Positions 35,971-47,065 of a stretch of 64,000 nucleotides of DNA are shown here, one piece after another. A program made the position numbers and the translations under genes. The first letter of the stretch is position 1. Every line of letters starts with the position of its first letter. This DNA comes from Trichosphaerium sp. ATCC 40318 (Eukaryota; Protista; Tubulinea): assembly GCA_038496445.1 (NCBI GenBank), contig JALMLS010000370.1, forward strand, positions 124,001-188,000, given 5' to 3'. The notes under the pieces are model-generated. The model had not been told where the DNA came from and made no database searches. It saw only the letters and a list, made by a program, of their open reading frames with translations.

Positions 35971-37899
35971 TTACTGCCTTTCTTGGAGACCAAGACCAGA
36001 TATTTGTGCGGTTCTGCCCTATACAAATCGACACGTGAGCAACAAATACAGTAACTATAGGACGTACACTTTTTTCGTTGCGTTTGAGCCACTCCAACAT
36101 AGCGTTGGTACCTTTGTTAATGACAGGTCTTGGAGGAACAACGAGAGGGTTGTGCGATACGTCCATAATTTTGATGTGTGCTAAAAAATAAATTAAAGGT
36201 GGCTCTCTTTAAAAATAGGTTAAATTGTTGTAAGAATCGTACATTGTAGTCGGTACATTTCCCATGGTAATTCAGAGAGCATATTGTGACTGACATCCAA
36301 CTTAATTAAATTATCTAATGACGCAACTTCTGGAGGGAGGTAAGCAATCTCGTTAGATTTACCCTCTAGCTGTGTCAAGTTAGAACAACCACCGATACCA
36401 GAGCACAATTTCTTGAGTTGGTTACCGTTCATGATCAATCTTTGAGAGGGTGTTAGACAGTCAACAGAGCAAACAGTTGGTGACGCACTTTTTCAGAGCA
36501 GTGAGCTGCCCAATCTCGTCTGGAAGATCGGTAATTTCGTTGTTGGAGCAATCAATCGCTTCGAGTTGTCTCATCATGCAGACTTCCATAGGAAGCGAAG
36601 AGAATTGATTTGCAGAAATTGAAATTTTAGTGAGGCCCTTGAGATTACCAAATTCCTTTGGCAACAGCATGTTCCTAATCTTTGTGGTGAGGCATGTTGC
36701 AATTCAAAAAAAACCACCAAACAAAACGCACGTGAGCTGATTTCCTCGCAATTCTAATACCTTCAAGCCAGCAAGCTTACCTACGATCATAGTTAGCGTT
36801 ATGAACCACATAAATGTATTGGTACTAACCAATATCTTTTGGTAGCGTCTTGAGCCTGTTGTTGGCCATATTTAATCTCTCCAACTGACCAAGCAAACCG
36901 AGCTGTGGTGGCACCGCAGGGAGTTGCATGTTGTTTGACATGTTCAACGTCTTCAGATTATTAAGTCCACCAATGGACGGATCTACGTATTCAATCTGTG
37001 CAACGCGGTAAGTTACGGTGAGACGTGTGCAAATAATAAAAAATGCGAAAAGGAAAAACGCTAAAATTTTATCCGCCGAAGATACGTACTCTCAAACCCG
37101 AGATGTCGAGTTCAGTCAAGGCAGGGAAATTAGTGAAGGCAGGTAGGGACATGAGAGCGCCATTTGAACCGATATTCAAATTGAGCAAGCCTCTCAAGTT
37201 AATAAAGCTATCTGGAAGGTCTTGGAGCCTGTTACAGCCTACGTCGAGCTGTTGTAAAGCGACCATATTGCCGATATCCTGTGGTAGTTTCCGGATGACG
37301 TTTTCGTGCACGTCAAGCTTTACAAGCGTTTTAAGAGAGCAAATAGCATCTGGGAGCGCTTGAAGTTGATTCTTACGGCAAATTAGCGTCTTTAGCGATA
37401 CTGATTTCCCCAAATCGGATGGTAGAGTCTTAAGGTTGTTCTCCGAGAGATCGAGATACGTAAGACTTGGGGCGGTTCCGATTTCATCGCAAATTTCGTC
37501 GAGTTGGTTATTCGTTAGCACTAGTTTCGAGAGTGATTGCATTTGACCGAGGGCAGGTGGGAGTGGGTTAAAGAATAGCTTGTTGTTTTGTAGATAGAGC
37601 TCTTTTAGCGTTTTCAATTGACGTATCTCTGGAGGGACATTGTTGACGCGGTTGTTCGATAGATCTAAGTACGTAATTTGGCTCAAACCACATAGTTCTA
37701 CCGGTATGGAAGACAATTCATTATGAGCAAGTACGAGACGCTTGCAAGCAATACTACGTATGTTGGCTGGCAATTCGTCAATCCCCTTTTGCGAAAGGTC
37801 AAGCTCCTCCGCTCTTGAGTACTTTTTGGACTTCATTTGCGAACGCAATTGCTTTGCGCTTGTGTGAGCTGTCTTTTTGTCCTTCTTTTTACGAAACAT
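35971..37899 (-). CDS. lrrA: Leucine-rich-repeat protein, Dictyostelium LrrA-like
   Basis: About 20 LxxLxLxxNxL repeats. N-terminus MKSKKYSRAEELDLSQKGIDELP..ACKRLVLAHNEL and LYLQNNKLFFNPLP resemble LrrA as recalled. Confidence 0.8.
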
Positions 37900-38105: not shown

Positions 38106-41100
38106 ATGTCCAAGCACAGATTCTCATCCTTGGATCTATGTTGTCAAATAAAACGCCTGAAGGAGACGATACAAGGCTTGCGCATATCTAACATCTATGA
38201 TATTAACAACAAAACGTATTTGCTCAAATTCGCCAAGTCCGGAGGTGGTGAAGGTTCTAAGATATTTGTACTTGTTGAGTATGTAAAAACGCTTGAAGGC
38301 AATCTAATAGTTGCAGGTCTGGTACACGTATACACACTACAACCTTCACGCGTGGTAAAAGTGACGCTCCGTCCGTTTTCACAATGAAGGTACATTAACG
38401 CTTCAAACGTTGTTCTAACCGCGCACAGCTACGAAAACACTTGCGTTACAAGCGCTTGGAGTCAATTGAGCAACTTGGCATGGATAGAATTTGTAAACTC
38501 AAATTTGTTAATGTAGATGAAGTATTCTACTTGCTATTCGAATTTTACGCTGGAGTACGCATGAAACGTAAAGTTTTGTAATTTTCTCGTGGAATTTACA
38601 CAAAAAAGGGTAATGTTGTGTTATGCGACAAAAACATGAAGATTCTCACAGTATTGAGGTACGTAGATTTAAAAAAAAAAAGTAGAAATGACGTGTGCAA
38701 GTAAAATGGAAATTTGTTTGAAAAACGTTGGTGGAGATCACTGAATCCTTTTTTTTGTAGGACGTACAAGTTTGATGAAGACCACTTTATTGCTACCAAT
38801 AGAACCTATCCATTGGACTTGATAAAAGAATTTCCAGAACCGACACTTGAACGGCTTCAGAAATCCATCGCAGATAATTCCAAGTCACTCATTAAAGATG
38901 CTTTGGCTAGAAATTTTTGTACGTCTACTGTCATGTTGTGTCTTATTTTTTTATTTGTTTAACAGTTTCATTGTAGTGCTTGGCGGTGAGATGGTAGCAC
39001 ACTGTCTTAAAAACGCAAATATTGTTCCAAAGACACCTGTAGCCAAGCTAACAGCCGACCAACTTAACGATATTCTTGCACAACTACAAGTTGCGAAAGA
39101 GTTTGTATTCCAAAAGGACTCTGGCAAGGGCTACATATTCTGTAAAAAAAAGGACGAAAAGAGCAAGCCAGAAGATGCCAAGGAAGGACGAGATTATCAA
39201 CTTTTCGCACCGTACAATTTTAGTCAATATGCTGGACAACCAGTCAAGGAGTTCCCTAATTTCGACGCTGCTGTTGATGAATACTTTTCGAAAATTGAAG
39301 GCACCAGAGCTAAGAGTTTCAACGAGCAACAGGAAGATAAAATAAAGAAAAGTCTGGCAAAAGTTAAACAAGGACAAGAAAAGCGTATTACTGCGCTCAA
39401 CAAACAAATCGAACTCTGTGATTTAAAAGCAAATTTGATAACACAGCACCTCCATCTCGTCGAACAGGTCATAAAGAGTGTCAATGCAGCATTGGCCGCC
39501 AGCATGAAATGGGATGACCTTTGGACTCACATACAAAAAGGCAAAGAAATGGGCGACCCTTCAGCACAGATAGTGCACAAGTTGTTGTTGAAACAAAATA
39601 AGGTAAAACAGAACACGTTACACGTGAACAAAACCGGCTCACAATTTCTAAGGCCATATTGGCACTGTACGATAGCCACTACGATGACGAAGAGGAAAGA
39701 GAGGATGAAGGAAATGCCAAGTGCACGCTGTACGTTTTTCGTGGTTATCTGAGCACTCCAATTGTTAACCTTTCTTTTGCGTCTAGTGTTGACATTGACC
39801 TATCTCTTTCTGCTCATGCCAACGCAACTGAATACTATAAAATCAAGAAAGCGTCAGTGGCCAAGTTGGGAAAGACTCACGAGTCAGCACAAATGTCCTT
39901 GAAGTCTGCCGAGAAAAAAGCAGCCAGCAAAATGCGTGATGTACGCAGAATTGTTAAAGCGTTTATTTTGTTGATTGACAAAACCCTCTAGGTTCGCACG
40001 AAAACAAATGTAACAAAGATCAGAAAGCAGAACTGGTTTGAAAAGTTTCGTTGGTTTATTAGCAGCGACGGTTATATAGTAATTTGTGGTGGCGATGTTC
40101 AACAGAACGAGGTACGATAAAAAACCTCACTATTTACCTTGGCAATGAAACTAAAGTTTTGATGGTGTAGCTCATCTACAGAAGATACTTGCAAAAAGGT
40201 GACATTTATGTACATGCACAGATACAGGGTGCTGCTAGTGTACGAGGCTCTTATATAGTCTGGAATATAAAACTAACATGCAGCGGTTTAGGTCGTCGTT
40301 AAGAACCCATCAGGTGAGGAAGTGCCCCCTTCAACGTTAATAGAGGCTGGGCAAATGGCTGTGTGTCACAGTTCAGCTTGGAAAGCAAAGGTAGTTGTCG
40401 CTGCTTACTGGGTATATGACCACCAAGTACGTAGTCTTTCACTGCTATAGGACATGGGTATACACGTGCTCATACTTTATAAGGTGTCTAAAACCGCTGA
40501 GTCTGGTGAGTACTTAGTTGCTGGAGCGTTTATGATCCGTGGTAAGAAGAACTTTTTACCGCCTTGCAACCTTCAATACGGCTACGGTATCTTGTGGAAA
40601 ATCCACCCTGATTCAGTCGTTAACCACATGAATGAGGGCAAGAAGCCACTCGCTCGATCTCTAGATGGTACGTTTTAATGAAGAGAATTGGTAGTATTCA
40701 ATATTCACATTGCAATGTAGCACCACCTGCCGACCCAAAAACCTCAGATGATCCTAAACCAGCTGGCACAGATGAGCAGAAACAAGAAAGTGAAAGTACT
40801 GCTGAAAAACCTAAAGAACAAGATGAGCCTCAACCAGAAACCAAAGACGATAGCAATGATCAACCTGGAGAGGATGTTGCCACTGAAGAAGTTAAAGAAG
40901 ATGCTGATAAAAGTAATGACGGTGATAAGCAGTCGGTAGATGACGCTAATGGTAAAGACGAAGAAACTACAGACGATGACAATGAAGAAGATGGAGAAGA
41001 TGGAGAAGACGAAGAAGACGAAGATGATGACGTAGATGAGGCCGCATTGCTGGCGGCATCTCAGTACATGTTGAATGAAGCTCCTGACAAGCCATTGACA

Positions 41101-42023
41101 AGTAAAGCTAAGCAACAAGCCAAACCAGTTGGACGTAATCTAAACGTACAAGGACAGGTACCACTCTACACCAGAATTGTTTATAGTATGTTCACTAATG
41201 TGTGATAGCTTCCTGGTGAATACTACAACAAGAAACACGAAACTACGTCCAAACCGAAGAAAAGATTAACCAAGACACAAAAGAGACGCCTCAAAAAGTA
41301 TGAATTGCAAGATGAGGAGGACAAAGCGTTGTTGTACAAACTCTACGGTATTGGCAAACAGCCAGAAAAAGGTAAAACTGGATTTATCTGACCGTATAGC
41401 ACCAAAGTATGCTCACAAAATGTAGATAAGGAACCAGAGGTTGAAGAACCTGTAAAGGTAGAATTGACTGTTGAGGAGAAGGCTATCAGAAAGCAACAGA
41501 ACCTTAAAAAGCAAAGAAGTCGTGAGAAAGAAGAAGAGGAGATCAGGCGGTTGATGAAACAAGAAAACGTGACATTGACTGAAGAACAACAAGCTCAGCT
41601 AGCCAAAATCACTGCTCAAGGGCTAGGTGTAAACTTGTCCGAGTATATTGGCAACCCGCTTACAGGAGACGCTTTGATGTTCGCCATCGCAGTATGTGCT
41701 CCATACTCAGCGCTGAGCAAGTATAAATACAAGGTACGCCAAATCTTGAAGCGCGTACGTGTTTTCGTGTTTACGTTCCGTAGGTAAAGCTAATGCCAGG
41801 CAACATGCGCAAGGGCAAGGCTTCAAAATTAGCACAATCTACAATGCTGCGTAACGCAAAGCTAGCCAAAGAGCGTGACTTGATGCGATCACTATCACCT
41901 AATGAACTTACGCAACCAATGCTTCCTGATGTTCGTGTCTCCTCTCCAGGAATCTACGGCCAAGCCAAGAAGAAGAAAGGAAAAGGAAAAGGAAAAAGAG
42001 GTAAAGGTAAAGGACGGCGGTGA
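38106..42023 (+). CDS. NEMF: Ribosome quality-control factor NEMF/Rqc2
   Basis: [111 protein letters not shown] and [21 protein letters not shown]. Confidence 0.96.
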
Positions 42024-42145
42024 TTGCCTCAACACATCCCCTCGCCCACAAAAAGAAATAAAGCGCAGTTAAAACAAAAGACGAAACAGCTTTATTCGAG
42101 CGTAACCAAACATAGGTTGTTTTAAGTGTGGTAAATACTCTATTT

Positions 42146-44027
42146 CTATTCCTCTGGTAGACCTCCAGACACTTCGCGGAACAATCTGCGTCTGTGGGAA
42201 TCCATACGTTCTAGACACAAGTTAGATCAAGATTGTGTTAAGGTTGGCGTACGTTGAGCGATAACTTCCTTTTCGAAGGCCAAGAACTTTGCGCGGCTGA
42301 CTTCCCTGAAACAAATGGCCAAAATCATGTCGTTCACTATCTTAAAGTCACCCAAAGTGACGTACGTGCCACAAGTTCTAGTTGAAATATAAGATGAAGA
42401 AAACATCTTGTTTTGCGCACCTGGCAGCTACGCTTCTGTAAAAGTTGGCGGCATAAGCCCTGTTGTTTGCGTGCACACCGTAAACCTTTACGCCCATCTC
42501 GTAGAGTTGATCTGCTTCTTCCTCCCAGTCAATCTATTACAGCATTGAGATACAAACATTTTTTAAAAAGCTGTTTATTACCTCTCTAGGCTTGCCAAAG
42601 CATTTACCATTCATGTACTGAGTCATTTGCTTTTTAACAGCCTCTTTTTCGTGCGGTTGATCGTCGCCTATCAAAACTAGGATACGTGTTGATCCCTCGG
42701 TCCAGTCAAAGTTTTGTATTTGCTCCAAAACAAGCTCGTAGCACTCAGGCGAATCGCCACCTGGAAGGCCTGTAGAATCCTTTACAAACTTGCTAATTTT
42801 TTTTGCATTGTCTGTAAGATCAACAGAGTCCATGCACTGCTTCTCTGTTCTACCACAGTAGTCGCCTGAAATATTGGATTGATTAATAAACCCCTTTTGT
42901 AAACTTTACAAAAAAAGAAAGTAGTCGTACCATGTGCTACAATGCCAATGCGAAGTCTGCCGTCTGGCACGTCTTGAAACAACCTCTTGGTCGTTTCTTG
43001 AATTGTAGTCTTAGCCTGAGCAAGCGCTTGTCCCATTGAGCCAGTGCAATCGAAGGAGAAGACAATCTCGGTAATCTAGTCGAGGTGTCAGTCAAACAAA
43101 AAAAAATTGGATTCTTACACCGCTGTCTGGTCCAGTGGATTTTGGTTCGCGATCCTTGAACTTGTTCTTGCTAAATCCAATATTTGAAGGTGTCCTCTAC
43201 AAGTAACATAAACGGATGAGCCTCATGGCAATTAGCATTGATACGTACACGGATCATTGGCTTTGATTTCTTGGCCTTCTTTACCGGCTTTTTGGCCGCT
43301 TTCCTTCCTACAAAAAGGTAAGTCGCTACGCCACCCAATCTTCGGCTGATTTACCCTTTTTGGCACGTGTTGTCTTGGTTGCACTCTTAGGTGGACGGCC
43401 GCGACCTCTCTTTGCTGTAGTCTATAATTTTGTAAAGGGTTATTTTCATATTATTTTTAAATTTAACGTTACTGGAACCGTACCTTTTTTGCTGCAGTTT
43501 TCTTTTTGGTAGCCTTTCTTTTGGTTGTCTTTTTCTTTTTCTTGGCTATTACCTTGAACAGGCGACCACTTTTGCGTTCAAAAATACCTTCTTCTTCTCC
43601 CCTACGGATCGTCAGATCTTAATTGAGTATTTTGGCGCACTTTATCAGACTTCTTCGAACAGCACCCTTAAAAGTGTTCTCTGGAACTTCGTAATTCGTG
43701 TAGATGTACTTGTAAATAGCTGCATGCGATGCCCACCCACGTTTTGCTACTTCCTACATTTAACCGTTAGCTGTTTGTAGTGCACACTCTCGCACGTACT
43801 TTGATGGCCTCGGCAGCCATTAGTTTGTAGCTCTTCTTTTTTGCTGTACCAGGAACCAACTCTCTTGTGGTTCTAAATTAACGTCGTTAGATTTACATGA
43901 GCGATATTCCATACCTCGAGTAGGCAGGTGCAGTGAGAACTTCGCTAATCGAAACAGTGCGCGCCAGCTTCGGCTTTCTTTTTCTCAACTCCATCCCAAA
44001 TGAGGACTTGGCTTTTCTCTTGGACAT
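42146..44027 (-). CDS. Linker histone H15 globular domain + K-rich tail + AT-hook + vWA (MIDAS) fusion protein
   Basis: SYKLMAAEAIK-EVAKRGWASHAAIYKYIYTNYEV..GEEEGIFERKSGRLFKV, then KKKTTKKKATKKK, then KRGRGRPPK, then EIVFSFDCTGSMG, RIGIVAHGDY, GGDSPECYELVL, ILVLIGDDQPH and IDWEEEA. Continuous frame through GT-AG introns. Confidence 0.85.
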
Positions 44028-44149
44028 GATACGTGTTTTTTGGTGCAGTTGGAAATGTTATCAGACAAAAACCGTAGTTGGGGCAGTGACTTAAACACAA
44101 ATTGTTTTTTGTTGTTTGTTTAATTCTTTTATTTTCGCTGCGTGCAATA

Positions 44150-47065
44150 TCAGCCATAACGGTTTACATAACGTGTGAACGCCATTACTGTGTCACTGCC
44201 TTCGTCGTCGTTGTATCTCGTTGCAAGGCGAGAAGAGCGCCTGTACATGTTAGGACCTAGACTGCTCTTGTTTGACTCCACTTGCTTAATTCCGGTCGTT
44301 ATTCTATTATACAGGTGTGTGATATTGGCTTTTAATTCTTTTTCACGTGTGCCTCTATCATCTAGCCACTGTAGTACTTGATCAAGCTACAACGGAAAAA
44401 AGTCAAAAAGAGTTACTCCAAGACAAGCCCTTCACAAAATACACAAAAAAAGTACCTGCTCTACAGTGTCATAGTAGCCCCACAATGCGGAAGCGGCAGG
44501 TGCTTTATATTTTTGTTTATCATTACTTGATGACTCCTTGACCATGTCCAACTTGATTGCGTTCGACCCTGTTGACTTTTTCTTGTCCTTGGGGTAGTTT
44601 GACACATTGCGCTTATGAAATTCGACATAGATTCGAGTTGCAGACGGCATAAGCCTACCTCTACTCAATCCTGTATGTTTGCCGAACCACTAATGGATCA
44701 ATTAAATGACAACCCAGTAGGCATATACTGAGCTATATAAACAGATTGATTGTTCTTACCCAGTAGTGGTTACAATATCTATCTCTGCCCAGAAAACACC
44801 TTCGCAAATCTGATTTCTCGCGCTTGATGAGCAATTGGTCGACTGGTTTTTTCTCTTTTTTTGCTAAACGTATATCCTTGTCTACGCTTATCACTTTTTG
44901 CATTGAGTCATTAACATGGTTGCTATCAAAGGGGTTAAGACATGAAAATGAGATTAGATCAAAAAAAAACCCTATCCGTACTGAGTAATGTTGTGCATCA
45001 GCAGATGTTCAACCAATTGCCGCAACAACCCCAACTTGACGTTCAAGTCCAAGCTAACATAATCTTGTACGCCATCAGATTGCAGTTCTTGTGGTAAGTC
45101 GTGAGGGAACTATACAGGATAAGGGTTCCACATGTGTCTTATTAGTATAATAATTAACGCCTATTGTACCTGCGTAACATATTGCTCTAAGCATCCCAAC
45201 CACTTGTCCAGTGCTGCAAGTTGGTCAGTATAATACACATATAAAACTGAAAAAGAAAAAAAAAGAGTGCGGAGCTCGTACTAAACTTTGTCTTTGAGAA
45301 GTTGTTCAGCCGCTCAACTTGCATTATCGCTGCAAGTAGACGATAGTGAAGAGACGCCACCAACCGTGATTTACCATCGTGCCTATTATGTGGTTAGTAA
45401 ATAAGACAGAACATCATGTTGTGGTGACTGCTGTTACTTACTTTATTGCGTCACTAAAATCATCGATGGAGAAGGGTGTCAAGCTTATTTGCTTTCTTCA
45501 AGGAACACGTGTCAATTGAAATGAAATAGTTTTGGATTTTCTGAACAGCCGAAAATTGTACGTACCCGAATGTGTTAACAAAATTCCATACAGTGAAAAG
45601 GTCACCTAGGCACTTTTGTGGCACATCTGTATCAGTGCACGGAGGCACCATTGGACTTTCATCCATATCACCACGCTCGATGAGTTCATCTGCAATTGGA
45701 TAGGCTATCTTGGGCTCCTACAAAAAGAATTAATACCACCAACCTCATATTTGTCAAGCAGTAGTTACGACAAAAAGACTAAGTTCGAGAATAAATACCT
45801 TTTTTTGGCGCTTTCCTGACGGTTCGTCACCATCGTTATCCATACTACGTTTTCGCTACAGCGTACAGATAAGCACGCAACTAGGACTGTTCTTTCGGAA
45901 AGAAAGACTACATACTTTTTTTTTATTCATTCTCTCTGTCAGCAGTTGCTGTATACTCTCAGGCAGCTCAGCAGCCAGCCCGTACTTCTCAATGTATTTG
46001 CTCTGTGCTATGAACGGAGCTCCTTTAAACGACTGCCTGAGCGATGCTTAGCAATTGGAAAATAGAGATTGGCAGTGATAATAATATTGTACTTGGTAGT
46101 GCATTCACGGAGCTTGTGTCGGACCAATTTTATAGTTAGCAAACCTCTTGGACGACTGAATTTGAAGTTAACCTAATGTCTAAAATTTAGGGTGATTACC
46201 TCAACGTATTCTTTTTGACACGCATTGTTGTCTTTTGCTTGATGCCAAGTTTAGATTGCTTTTTCTCATTTTTAGCCTACAATTATAGTTGTCACATAAC
46301 ACATTTTGTATCGATACTACACTTACCTCTGTAGCTTGAAATTCGATAGTAAGTTCTCCCTTACCTTGCGGAGAATCACGTACAGTAGCGAGCCTTTTGG
46401 ACTTGTAGTAGACAGTTTCTCCAACAAAGTAATTGTTCTGACATTAAAAAAAAAACAGTGTTAACTTTTCGACACTTTAGCAACAACTGGTTTACTACCA
46501 ACCTTTAGAAAAGTGTACACTTCCTTTGTCACAGACTCTAGAGTGCCCTGTTCTACGAGGGGTGTTAGTGAACCAAACACGGTTTTTCTGTTTGTGGCTA
46601 TTACTCCCAGTTTTATCACTACTTACTGTGGTGCGCTTTCGTTACTATGACACGTTCCCATGCATCACTCATTTTACTTAGACTTTCTATACCAGTGTAA
46701 GTTGATGTAAGCCAAAGTGTTAATTGCCTGTTGCATCAGCCTCGCTCTCCAATGCTTGTTGATATGTCAGGTTTTTGGTCTTGGTAATAGCGCATGAAAA
46801 GATACTCTGATTGTAGTATTCTATACGTTTTGTGTATTCCCTTTACACTGTCAATGGGGTAGAGTAAAAAGGTGTGTGTTGGTAAAAAATATGGCGGGAG
46901 CGTACTCATAGTCACGAAAAACCTCTCCGGTGAACCGCACCACGTAGACTTCTTCATCATCGCTAGTTTTTGTTATCATGTAACAAACAAACAGTAAAAC
47001 GCATCCTACGCAAGGTTTAAAGGTTTTGGCGTGAACTCTACCGCGTGCAAACCTACGAGAGGCAT
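44150..47065 (-). CDS. WAC-DDT-WHIM ISWI accessory subunit (ACF1/BAZ1A/Itc1-like), without PHD or bromodomain
   Basis: WAC: MPLVG..DDEEVYVVRFTGEVFRDYEEYTKRIEYYNQSIFSCAITKTKNLTYQQALESE. DDT: LGDLFTVWNFVNTFG. WSD/WHIM: FLGRDRYCNHYW and RGTREKELK. Confidence 0.9.

What the first reader, a model, noticed from the sequence alone, without database searches (positions are those of the whole stretch)
42146..44027. Linker histone H1 (H15 + AT-hook) fused to a MIDAS-intact vWA domain
Seen in sequence: one spliced frame runs from MSKRKAK through a winged-helix H15 domain (SYKLMAAEAIK..ASHAAIYKYI..NY..LFKV), an H1-like K/A/T tail and an AT-hook (KRGRGRPPK) into ...PDSG|ITEIVFSFDCTGSMG. There is no stop and every junction I traced is canonical. 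Established: H15 + AT-hook is the plant GH1-HMGA layout, and DxTGS / GGDxPE / IGDxxPH / DWxxE marks the vWA subtype found in Dictyostelium VwkA-like and many bacterial proteins. I know of no characterised H1-vWA fusion. Inference: a nucleosome-binding protein that presents a metal-dependent interaction surface on chromatin, possibly a docking site for an AAA+ ATPase or remodeller.
Basis: partly seen in the sequence, partly recalled or inferred. Interest (0 to 1): 0.8.

Follow-up and report, generated by a model that had tools for sequence, protein, structure and literature searches.

The report
Amoeba linker histone fused to vWA domain
This is a real, expressed amoeba gene for a DNA-packing linker histone (H1-type head, lysine-rich tail, one AT-hook) that runs on into a metal-site protein-docking (vWA) domain; the same layout is kept in another amoeba but nobody has studied it.

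Summary
Observation confirmed. On the minus strand, 44027-42146, twelve exons joined by eleven GT-AG introns of 39-65 nt give one 450-residue frame. Intron-less contigs from four public studies show every junction. The key tail-to-vWA junction (43119|43075) appears in two of those studies.

Domains, in order:
- an H15 linker-histone head (exon 3 alone scores E 2.4e-4 against PF00538);
- a tail of 32% lysine;
- one AT-hook (PF02178, above cut-off);
- a conserved pre-vWA motif;
- a complete vWA module, holding all ten invariant residues of its family.

The fusion is not a one-off. An environmental protein (P0070) and two Planoprotostelium fungivorum proteins share the layout and its linker motifs, and all three are unnamed and uncharacterised. 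Their nearest vWA relatives carry basic, SPKK-rich N-tails instead of H15.

The wider vWA family (Pfam VWA_4) swaps partners freely. Its best solved structural match is the integrin beta I-like domain.

I found no paper on H1-vWA. This scan had already noted another H1-VWA gene, and H1-TerD and H1-WWE genes, on other DNA of this genome.

Best reading, which is inferred: a chromatin-tethered adaptor that docks a partner through its metal site. The AAA+/remodeller idea has no support. This is a new variant of a known kind, of moderate interest.

The parts
42146..44027 (-). Whole coding region: 12 exons, 450 codons plus stop. Exons: 44027-43915, 43872-43800, 43753-43641, 43601-43484, 43421-43355, 43307-43249, 43196-43119, 43075-42931, 42865-42582, 42533-42421, 42377-42253, 42210-42146.
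   Evidence: Model built. All 11 junctions seen in cDNA-type contigs.
44028..44117 (-). 5' untranslated leader, at least this long. No upstream ATG in it.
   Evidence: X4 contig covers 43915-44117. Sequence read.
42082..42145 (-). 3' untranslated region. Contigs end at 42082-42089.
   Evidence: table 8 (X1 record 1, X4 record 9).
43550..43832 (-). H15 (linker-histone globular, winged-helix) domain, residues about 52-117, split over exons 2-4 by introns 2 and 3.
   Evidence: Exon 3 alone: PF00538 E 2.4e-4, 21.7 bits, profile positions 16-50 of 74. BLASTP of the N-terminus against the P0070 N-terminus gives E 1e-5. P0070's H15 passes Pfam and its only PDB hits are H5/H1.0.
43249..43549 (-). Lysine-rich H1-like tail (residues 117 to about 181; the measured stretch 117-207 has K 32%, pI 12.0), over exons 4-6.
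   Evidence: Composition.
43386..43412 (-). AT-hook KRGRGRPPK (residues 143-151), in exon 5.
   Evidence: PF02178, 20 bits against a cut-off of 17.4. Coordinates.
43119..43160 (-). Conserved pre-vWA motif FKDREPKSTGPDSG (residues 194-207), at the end of exon 7.
   Evidence: Aligns to DFSDRQPQSTGPDSG of Planoprotostelium P0216/P0099 and to P0070. The equivalent segment is modelled at pLDDT above 90 against the vWA core.
42146..43075 (-). vWA module with C-terminal helices (residues 208-450), exons 8-12.
   Evidence: Local phmmer of this part aligns end to end with homologues, best P0070 at E 2.4e-73. Orthologues pass PF00092/PF25106. AF2 model of the orthologous module has pLDDT 92.6, and its best PDB matches are integrin beta I-like domains.
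43037..43051 (-). Metal-site loop 1, DCTGS (residues 216-220; the family's DxTGS in place of the classical DxSxS).
42744..42761 (-). GGDSPE (residues 291-296), matching the DxPE metal-site loop of integrin beta I-like domains.
   Evidence: Profile alignment to integrin beta-6. Coordinates.
42651..42671 (-). IGDDQPH (residues 321-327), the beta4-end aspartate of the metal site.

Best explanation
SHOWN: this is one expressed gene of an amoeba-type eukaryote. Its single spliced mRNA encodes a 450-residue protein. The protein has a basic N-terminus, an H15 linker-histone winged helix, a lysine-rich H1-type tail with one AT-hook, a conserved linker motif (F-K-D-R-x-P-K-S-T-G-P-D-S-G) and a complete vWA module of the VWA_4 type. 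That module keeps every family-invariant residue, including the metal-site set DxTGS / GGDxPE / IGDxxPH. The layout is orthologously conserved in Planoprotostelium (two genes) and in an environmental eukaryote. The nearest relatives of its vWA all carry basic, SPKK-rich N-terminal tails.

INFERRED: the H15 head, the tail and the AT-hook hold the protein on linker or AT-rich DNA at nucleosomes, as they do in H1 and HMGA proteins. The acidic vWA module (pI 5.6) then acts as a docking surface. Its metal ion would be completed by an Asp or Glu of a partner protein, so a partner is recruited to, or held on, chromatin. The partner is unknown. Going by the domains this vWA family is fused to elsewhere (ubiquitin/SUMO-like, RING, BRCT, FHA, WWE), a ubiquitin-system or DNA-damage-signalling partner is the likeliest class.
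For: - Gene model and transcripts. All 11 junctions are seen. One X1 contig carries exons 1-7. Exons 7-8 are joined in X2, with a 12-nt overhang in X7. One X4 contig carries exons 8-12.
- H15.
- AT-hook.
- Tail composition.
- vWA: end-to-end alignment to homologues. All 10 invariant and 19 of 20 near-invariant family residues are kept. Fold confirmed on orthologues. Integrin beta I-like domains are the closest solved fold and share the DxPE / D..H loops.
- Conserved clade: support 99/97 for the window protein, P0070, P0099, P0034, P0067, P0094, P0004, P0139, P0087 and P0001. The N-termini of the clade members measured have pI 9.4-11.6 and carry SPKK motifs; P0094 starts at the vWA and has none.
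- Orthologues with H15 + vWA: P0070, P0099, P0216, sharing the R-x-LVP and STGPDSG motifs.
- Partner spectrum of the family.
Against: - No experiment or localisation exists for any member.
- The H15 hit of the window's own protein could be scored only exon by exon, and it lies 0.7 bit under Pfam's cut-off on 35 of 74 profile positions.
- The AT-hook is absent from P0070 by my motif scan, and the alignment shows none in P0099 or P0216, so it is not a conserved part.
- Most clade members lack a detectable H15, so nucleosome-dyad binding may not be the conserved function.
- Metal binding is read from motifs only. I could not inspect the model's coordinates.
- Contigs break near the exon 7-8 junction in two of four runs. 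The 3' half has higher contig depth in X7 and X2, so extra shorter isoforms are not excluded.
- The ligand of this vWA subtype is unknown even for Dictyostelium VwkA (PMC2827801).
Confidence: 0.6

Rival explanations
1. Two products rather than one. The locus mainly makes an H1-like protein (exons 1-7) and a separate vWA protein (exons 8-12), and the joined mRNA is a minor read-through form.
For. In X1 and X4 the assembled contigs end at or near the exon 7-8 border (43123, 43075). Contig depth of the vWA half exceeds that of the H1 half in X7 (40 against 7-10) and in X2 (18.5 against 5.4, with no H1-half contig). Retaining intron 7 would end the frame 8 codons later (sequence).
Against: The contig ends carry sequencing adaptors, so they are technical breaks (table 7). 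The in-frame splice 43119|43075 is seen in two studies. In X4 the two halves have equal depth (97 against 105). The first Met of the vWA half lies inside the DCTGSM metal loop, so a separate start would cut off strand beta1. Exon 7 encodes the conserved pre-vWA motif, which in intron-free homologues is continuous with the vWA, and exon 7 is spliced to the lysine-rich tail exons. Orthologues keep H15 and vWA in one ORF.
Confidence: 0.08
2. The basic N-terminal half is a general nucleic-acid or nuclear/nucleolar targeting region (RNA or naked DNA), not a nucleosome-binding linker histone. The conserved job of the clade is done by 'basic tail + vWA', and H15 is an optional extra.
For: Most clade members have basic N-tails (SPKK motifs in several) and no detectable H15. 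The three H15 bearers do not form one subclade. A bryozoan relative has the vWA first and a lysine-rich HC2-like tail last.
Against: H15 with its flanking R-x-LVP motif is kept between the window organism, Planoprotostelium and P0070. This argues for selection on the winged helix itself. H15 domains are known to bind nucleosomal or linker DNA (established knowledge).
Confidence: 0.2
3. The vWA does not recruit a foreign partner. It self-associates, or binds an acidic segment of its own protein or of histones, and so acts as a chromatin-compaction or bridging module.
For: The vWA module is acidic (pI 5.6) beside a tail of pI 12. P0070 carries a long poly-Glu stretch in its tail that could serve as an internal metal-site ligand. 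The pre-vWA motif contains conserved Asp residues and packs on the domain.
Against: No direct evidence. The same vWA module works with very different partner domains (RING, ubiquitin, alpha-kinase, SAM, EF-hand). That fits a general partner-binding role better.
Confidence: 0.12

Closest known systems
Uncharacterised H15-vWA proteins of Planoprotostelium fungivorum (PROFUN_02952 = PRP88541.1 / A0A2P6NX63, and PROFUN_01931) and environmental protein P0070
   Same: Same order of parts: R-x-LVP motif, H15, basic tail, the D/K-F-x-D/E-R...STGPDSG motif, and a vWA module with the C-terminal helices. The vWA is 51% identical to P0070's over 242 aligned positions, and both fall in one supported clade.
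   Different: They have no AT-hook. The two Planoprotostelium models are joined to an upstream aspartyl protease or a Na/Ca exchanger, which is probably merged gene prediction. None is characterised.
Canonical linker histones H1/H5 (PF00538)
   Same: Short basic N-terminus, H15 winged helix, long lysine-rich tail.
   Different: A folded, acidic 243-residue vWA module follows the tail. The H15 wing is shorter, and the window's own H15 could be scored only in part.
Plant GH1-HMGA proteins (H15 plus AT-hooks; from established knowledge)
   Same: H15 followed by a basic region with an AT-hook.
   Different: One AT-hook instead of several, and the hook is not kept in the orthologues. There is an extra vWA domain, and the organism is an amoeba. 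No phylogenetic link was tested.
VWA_4 (PF25106) family, including alpha-kinase/vWA proteins of the Dictyostelium VwkA type
   Same: Same vWA subtype with DxTGS, HGDYCD, GGDxPE, IGDxxPH and DW motifs plus C-terminal helices. Alpha-kinase/vWA clusters carry PF25106 and match the model at TM 0.73.
   Different: No kinase domain, and the vWA is C-terminal behind a histone. The vWA ligand is unknown even for VwkA (PMC2827801).
Integrin beta I-like domain
   Same: Best solved structural match (Foldseek E 2e-10, TM about 0.6). Shared metal-site loops DxPE and D..H.
   Different: About 15% identity. The protein is intracellular, with no signal peptide, no hybrid or PSI domains, and no acidic ADMIDAS pair after the first loop.
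Ku70/Ku80 (a DNA-bound protein that presents vWA domains as docking platforms; from established knowledge)
   Same: The logic is alike: a DNA-binding part holds a vWA domain on DNA, and the vWA recruits partners.
   Different: Unrelated DNA-binding fold. The Ku vWA domains lack a metal site. There is no sequence relationship beyond the fold.

Membership tests
Linker histone H1/H5 (Pfam PF00538, H15 domain) | Significant match to the H15 winged-helix profile | tested here: inconclusive
Exon 3 alone scores E 2.4e-4, 21.7 bits against a cut-off of 22.4, covering profile positions 16-50 of 74. Exons 2 and 4 are too short to score alone. Indirect support is strong: the N-terminus aligns to P0070 (E 1e-5), whose H15 scores 30.8 bits and hits only H5/H1.0 in the PDB.
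Linker histone H1/H5 (Pfam PF00538, H15 domain) | Tripartite layout: short N-terminal region, globular domain, long lysine-rich C-terminal tail | tested here: met
   Residues 1-44 have pI 11.4. H15 spans about 52-117. The stretch 117-207 is 32% K with pI 12.0.
Linker histone H1/H5 (Pfam PF00538, H15 domain) | Binds the nucleosome dyad and linker DNA | not testable with these tools
   Needs nucleosome binding assays or localisation.
AT-hook (PF02178) | Match above the gathering score with an R-G-R-P core | tested here: met
   Exon 5 scores 20 bits against 17.4, with core KRGRGRPPK.
Plant GH1-HMGA | H15 followed by several AT-hooks and no other globular domain | tested here: not met
   One AT-hook only. 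A vWA domain follows. My motif scan found no AT-hook in P0070, and none is visible in P0099 or P0216 in the alignment.
vWA domain, VWA_4 subtype (PF25106 / PF00092) | Profile match and vWA fold | tested here: met
   By exon the match is only weak (exon 8 against PF25106, 15.2 bits). The joined module, compared locally, aligns end to end with family members (P0070 E 2.4e-73) that pass PF00092/PF25106. AF2 models of two orthologous modules have pLDDT 92.6 and 90.8 with vWA-fold matches.
vWA domain, VWA_4 subtype (PF25106 / PF00092) | Family-invariant residues, including the metal-site loops | tested here: met
   All 10 invariant and 19 of 20 near-invariant columns are kept. Motifs DCTGS 216-220, HGDYC 255-259, GGDSPE 291-296, IGDDQPH 321-327 and DWEEE 352-356.
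vWA domain, VWA_4 subtype (PF25106 / PF00092) | Binds a divalent cation and an acidic ligand residue | not testable with these tools
   Read from motifs and from the correspondence to integrin beta loops only.
VwkA-type alpha-kinase/vWA proteins | Alpha-kinase catalytic domain (PF02816) joined to the vWA | tested here: not met
   The 450-residue model has no room for a kinase and no hit to one. Only the vWA subtype is shared.
Integrin beta subunits | I-like domain inserted in a hybrid domain, with PSI and EGF domains, a signal peptide and a transmembrane helix | tested here: not met
   None of these is present in the 450-residue model. The similarity is confined to the vWA fold.

The most novel reading that the evidence does not exclude
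H15-tail-vWA proteins are an old amoebozoan class of 'effector-bearing linker histones'. They sit on linker DNA like H1 and use a metal-dependent vWA site to recruit a ubiquitin-like or ubiquitin-system partner. In this amoeba they would belong to a wider toolkit in which the H15 head delivers different sensor or adaptor domains to chromatin (vWA, and TerD and WWE according to other notes of this scan).
Probability: 0.25. Interest if true: 0.7.

Novelty: new variant of a known kind. Interest (0 to 1): 0.5.

Why it matters
Linker histones are usually seen as purely architectural. A conserved, expressed H1 that carries a folded metal-site docking domain would be a natural case of a linker histone that recruits other proteins directly.

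It also offers a tractable handle on the unknown ligand of the widespread VWA_4 / VwkA-type vWA domain. That domain occurs in animals, amoebae, bacteria, phages and giant viruses, fused to ubiquitin, RING, BRCT, FHA and kinase domains. Here the location of the domain's action, chromatin, can be guessed from the fusion partner.

Tried and rejected
1. Per-exon searches of the vWA core (exon 9) gave nothing useful in Pfam, NCBIfam, PADLOC or PDB sequences. Only the whole-library HMMER search opened the family.

2. A two-sequence H15 HMM (P0070 + P0099) did not find the window's H15, because the alignment was poor. Pairwise BLASTP did find it.

3. phmmer of the window's N-terminal half against the 150 vWA relatives found nothing. 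Pfam on those relatives was needed to see their H15.

4. The first word search with whole P0070 was swamped by low-complexity words. Restricting it to the vWA region worked.

5. No paralogue of the vWA lies in the window.

6. The window's own protein is not in either protein collection, so it has no protein id. I therefore could not scan or fold it whole.

7. Literature searches for linker histone with von Willebrand/vWA, for H15 domain architectures and for PF25106 gave nothing relevant.

8. Rejected: a bacterial or defence-system origin (no PADLOC hit); a secreted or adhesion role (no signal peptide; basic nuclear-type N-terminus); and AAA+/MoxR coupling (no such partner domain among relatives).

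9. Residue numbers printed beyond about residue 245 are 1-3 too low, because insertions were dropped by the alignment option I used. The numbers are the correct ones.
Full report
**1. What is in the sequence**

The finding lies on the minus strand. Reading 44150-42000 in reverse complement, I built the splice model in a script.
- It has twelve exons and eleven introns of 39-65 nt. Every intron has GT at the donor and AG at the acceptor.
- The frame is 1353 nt: 450 codons and a TAG that ends at 42146.
- The start ATG is at 44027. At least 90 nt of transcribed leader lie upstream with no other ATG.

**2. Transcript evidence**

The look-up of sequencing runs returned nine runs from five studies holding 6-45% of the sampled 31-mers. 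For the eight best holders (26-45%), that is the share expected if only the exons are present.

Read laying on 41500-44600 with four runs from four studies showed contigs that lack the introns.
- All eleven junctions appear at exactly the modelled coordinates, with CT..AC ends on the plus strand (GT..AG on the minus strand).
- One X1 contig (619 nt) carries exons 1 to 7.
- One X4 contig (814 nt) carries exons 8 to 12.
- The junction that makes the fusion, 43119|43075 (…PDSG|ITEIV…), is in an X2 contig (59 nt + 117 nt).
- In X7 the contig starting at 43119 is preceded by 12 letters identical to 43064-43075.
- The contig ends at 43123 (X1) and 43551 (X4) carry sequencing adaptors, so those breaks are technical.

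Two limits apply. These are assembled contigs of runs whose RNA status is only guessed, and contigs cannot give isoform ratios. The vWA half has higher contig depth than the H1 half in X7 and X2, but equal depth in X4.

**3. Domains, exon by exon**

In Pfam:
- Exon 3 (37 aa) hits Linker_histone PF00538 (E 2.4e-4, 21.7 bits against a cut-off of 22.4) over profile positions 16-50 of 74.
- Exon 5 hits AT_hook PF02178 (20 bits against 17.4).
- Exon 8 hits VWA_4 PF25106 weakly (15.2 bits).
- Exon 9, the vWA core, hits nothing in Pfam, PDB sequences, NCBIfam or PADLOC. The language-model look-up placed it among integrin-beta and VWA_4 clusters.

The stretch from the end of H15 to the vWA (residues 117-207) is 32% lysine with pI 12.0. 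The vWA part has pI 5.6.

**4. Relatives**

The whole-library HMMER search with exon 9 gave 615 proteins at E ≤ 1e-3. The best was only 49-52% identical, so no close orthologue, and not the window's own protein, is in the library.

In a local script, the joined vWA part aligned end to end (about 245 of 250 residues) with many of them. The best was P0070 at E 2.4e-73.
- The homologous alignment runs without gaps across exon junctions 8|9 (inside HGDYC), 9|10 (PRE|IDW), 10|11 (AAR|TCG) and 11|12. This confirms the junctions independently.
- The window's protein keeps all ten invariant and 19 of 20 near-invariant residues of a 100-member alignment of the module.
- The correct residue numbers are: DCTGS 216-220, HGDYC 255-259, GGDSPE 291-296, IGDDQPH 321-327, DWEEE 352-356.

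**5. The fusion is conserved**

Pfam on the best relatives found three proteins with Linker_histone plus this vWA:

| Protein | Source | Linker_histone hit | Other parts of the model |
|---|---|---|---|
| P0070 (507 aa) | environmental | residues 51-110, 30.8 bits | vWA |
| P0099 (797 aa) | Planoprotostelium fungivorum PROFUN_02952, PRP88541.1 / A0A2P6NX63 | 36.1 bits | VWA_4, preceded by an aspartyl protease |
| P0216 (749 aa) | Planoprotostelium fungivorum PROFUN_01931 | 36.6 bits | VWA_4, preceded by a Na/Ca exchanger |

The two Planoprotostelium upstream parts differ from each other. In P0099 the upstream part ends in a hydrophobic membrane or GPI-type segment. I therefore take them for merged gene predictions.

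Aligned N-terminal halves share several features with the window's protein:
- an R-x-LVP motif before H15;
- helix 1 (PSYK-MI…IK);
- a basic tail;
- the pre-vWA motif, which reads KFKDREPK-STGPDSGITE in the window and DFSDRQPQ-STGPDSGMTE in Planoprotostelium.

BLASTP of the window's N-terminus against P0070's gives E 1e-5. P0070's H15 finds only H5 and H1.0 globular domains in the PDB.

Three word-index searches found no further protein with PF00538 among about 120 relatives. Among the 150 nearest representatives, only 2 carry H15. The layout is therefore rare but not unique.

**6. Family tree**

A maximum-likelihood tree of 70 vWA modules puts the window's protein in a clade with support 99/97. 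Its other members are P0070, P0099, P0034 (Protostelium nocturnum), P0067, P0094, P0004, P0139, P0087 and P0001 (Rigifila ramosa).
- The clade members whose N-terminus I measured have basic N-terminal extensions (pI 9.4-11.6), several with repeated SPKK-type motifs. P0094 starts at the vWA, and P0216 was not in the tree. In most of them the vWA module sits at the very C-terminus.
- The three H15 bearers lie at different basal positions in the clade. This fits an ancestral H15 that was lost or eroded in some lines, or repeated gain. The data do not decide between these.

**7. The vWA subtype**

AlphaFold models of the orthologous modules are confident: P0070:222-472 at pLDDT 92.6 and P0216:470-749 at pLDDT 90.8.
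- In the second model, the conserved pre-vWA motif (model residues 21-38) is placed at pLDDT above 90. The peptide encoded by the window's exon 7 is therefore structurally part of the vWA module, while being spliced to the lysine-rich tail.
- The best solved structural matches are integrin beta I-like domains (E 2e-10, TM about 0.6).
- The family profile aligns its GGDxPE and IGDxxPH loops to the DxPE and D..H metal-site loops of integrin beta-6.
- The ESM Atlas and BFVD searches show the same module in bacteria (TM 0.80-0.87), phages, giant-virus RING proteins (TM 0.86), Basidiomycota and alpha-kinase/vWA proteins (PF02816 + PF25106, TM 0.73).

Partner domains in the family:
- ubiquitin (12 of 150) and Rad60-SLD;
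- RING and CCCH;
- BRCT and FHA;
- SAM, EF-hand + WWE, Ras, TROVE and bacterial HTH.

No ligand is known for this vWA subtype. The review of alpha-kinases (PMC2827801) reports no binding partner for the VwkA vWA.

**8. Interpretation**

Shown: a real, spliced, expressed gene for H15 + K-rich tail + AT-hook + vWA, with all vWA family-invariant residues, conserved as a layout in at least one other amoebozoan.

Inferred: the N-terminal half holds the protein on linker or AT-rich DNA, and the vWA presents a metal-dependent docking site for a partner.
- The partner spectrum of the family suggests ubiquitin-type or DNA-damage signalling.
- It gives no support to the AAA+/remodeller suggestion.
- The rival readings are separate products, a general nucleic-acid tail rather than true H1 behaviour, or self or intramolecular binding. 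They are scored in the Rival explanations section.

**9. Context from the scan**

These notes are unchecked by me. They call the organism a marine amoeba. On other pieces of the same genome they report another H1-VWA gene with an extra C-terminal domain (s1-378574), an H1-TerD gene (s1-390574) and an H1-WWE gene (s1-404294), together with many other vWA fusions. The scan has therefore seen this kind of thing before, on other DNA of this genome.

**10. Novelty**

No paper in the searchable library describes an H1-vWA protein. The orthologues in public databases are unnamed. I rate this a new variant of a known kind: H15 used as a chromatin-targeting head, as in plant GH1-HMGA, and VWA_4 as a freely recombining adaptor domain.

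Noticed in passing
window 38847-42023 (+): The neighbouring convergent gene is NFACT/NEMF(Rqc2)-like (PF05833 hit on the 301-aa ORF 38847-39752), with a Lys/Gly-rich C-terminus ending at 42023. Its intron 41732-41781 is confirmed by contigs. Its transcripts reach 42063, while the H1-vWA transcripts end at 42082-42089, so the two 3' ends lie about 20 nt apart.
   Followed up: partly
window 37069-37899 (-): A 276-aa uninterrupted ORF made of leucine-rich repeats (LRR_8 E 5e-30).
   Followed up: no
P0099 and P0216 (Planoprotostelium fungivorum PROFUN_02952, PROFUN_01931): Both public gene models join the H15-vWA protein to a different upstream membrane protein (aspartyl protease with a hydrophobic C-terminal segment; Na/Ca exchanger). 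These are probably merged predictions, which hide the H15-vWA architecture in databases.
   Followed up: partly
P0220 (Watersipora subatra) and P0222 (Acytostelium subglobosum): Relatives with other chromatin-flavoured layouts: vWA followed by a lysine-rich 'HC2 histone H1-like' tail in a bryozoan, and vWA + EF-hands + WWE in a dictyostelid.
   Followed up: no
window 42113-42131 (3' UTR): Run X1 differs from the window at 42113 (T>G) and 42125 (A>G) and has one extra T after 42131, plus a coding-region difference at 42311 (A>G). This is strain or allele variation between samples that carry different organism labels.
   Followed up: no
Clade (P0139, P0004, P0087): vWA relatives without H15 carry repeated S/T-P-K/R-K/R motifs in their N-tails, like sperm-type histone tails. 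This suggests DNA binding is the shared theme of the clade.
   Followed up: partly
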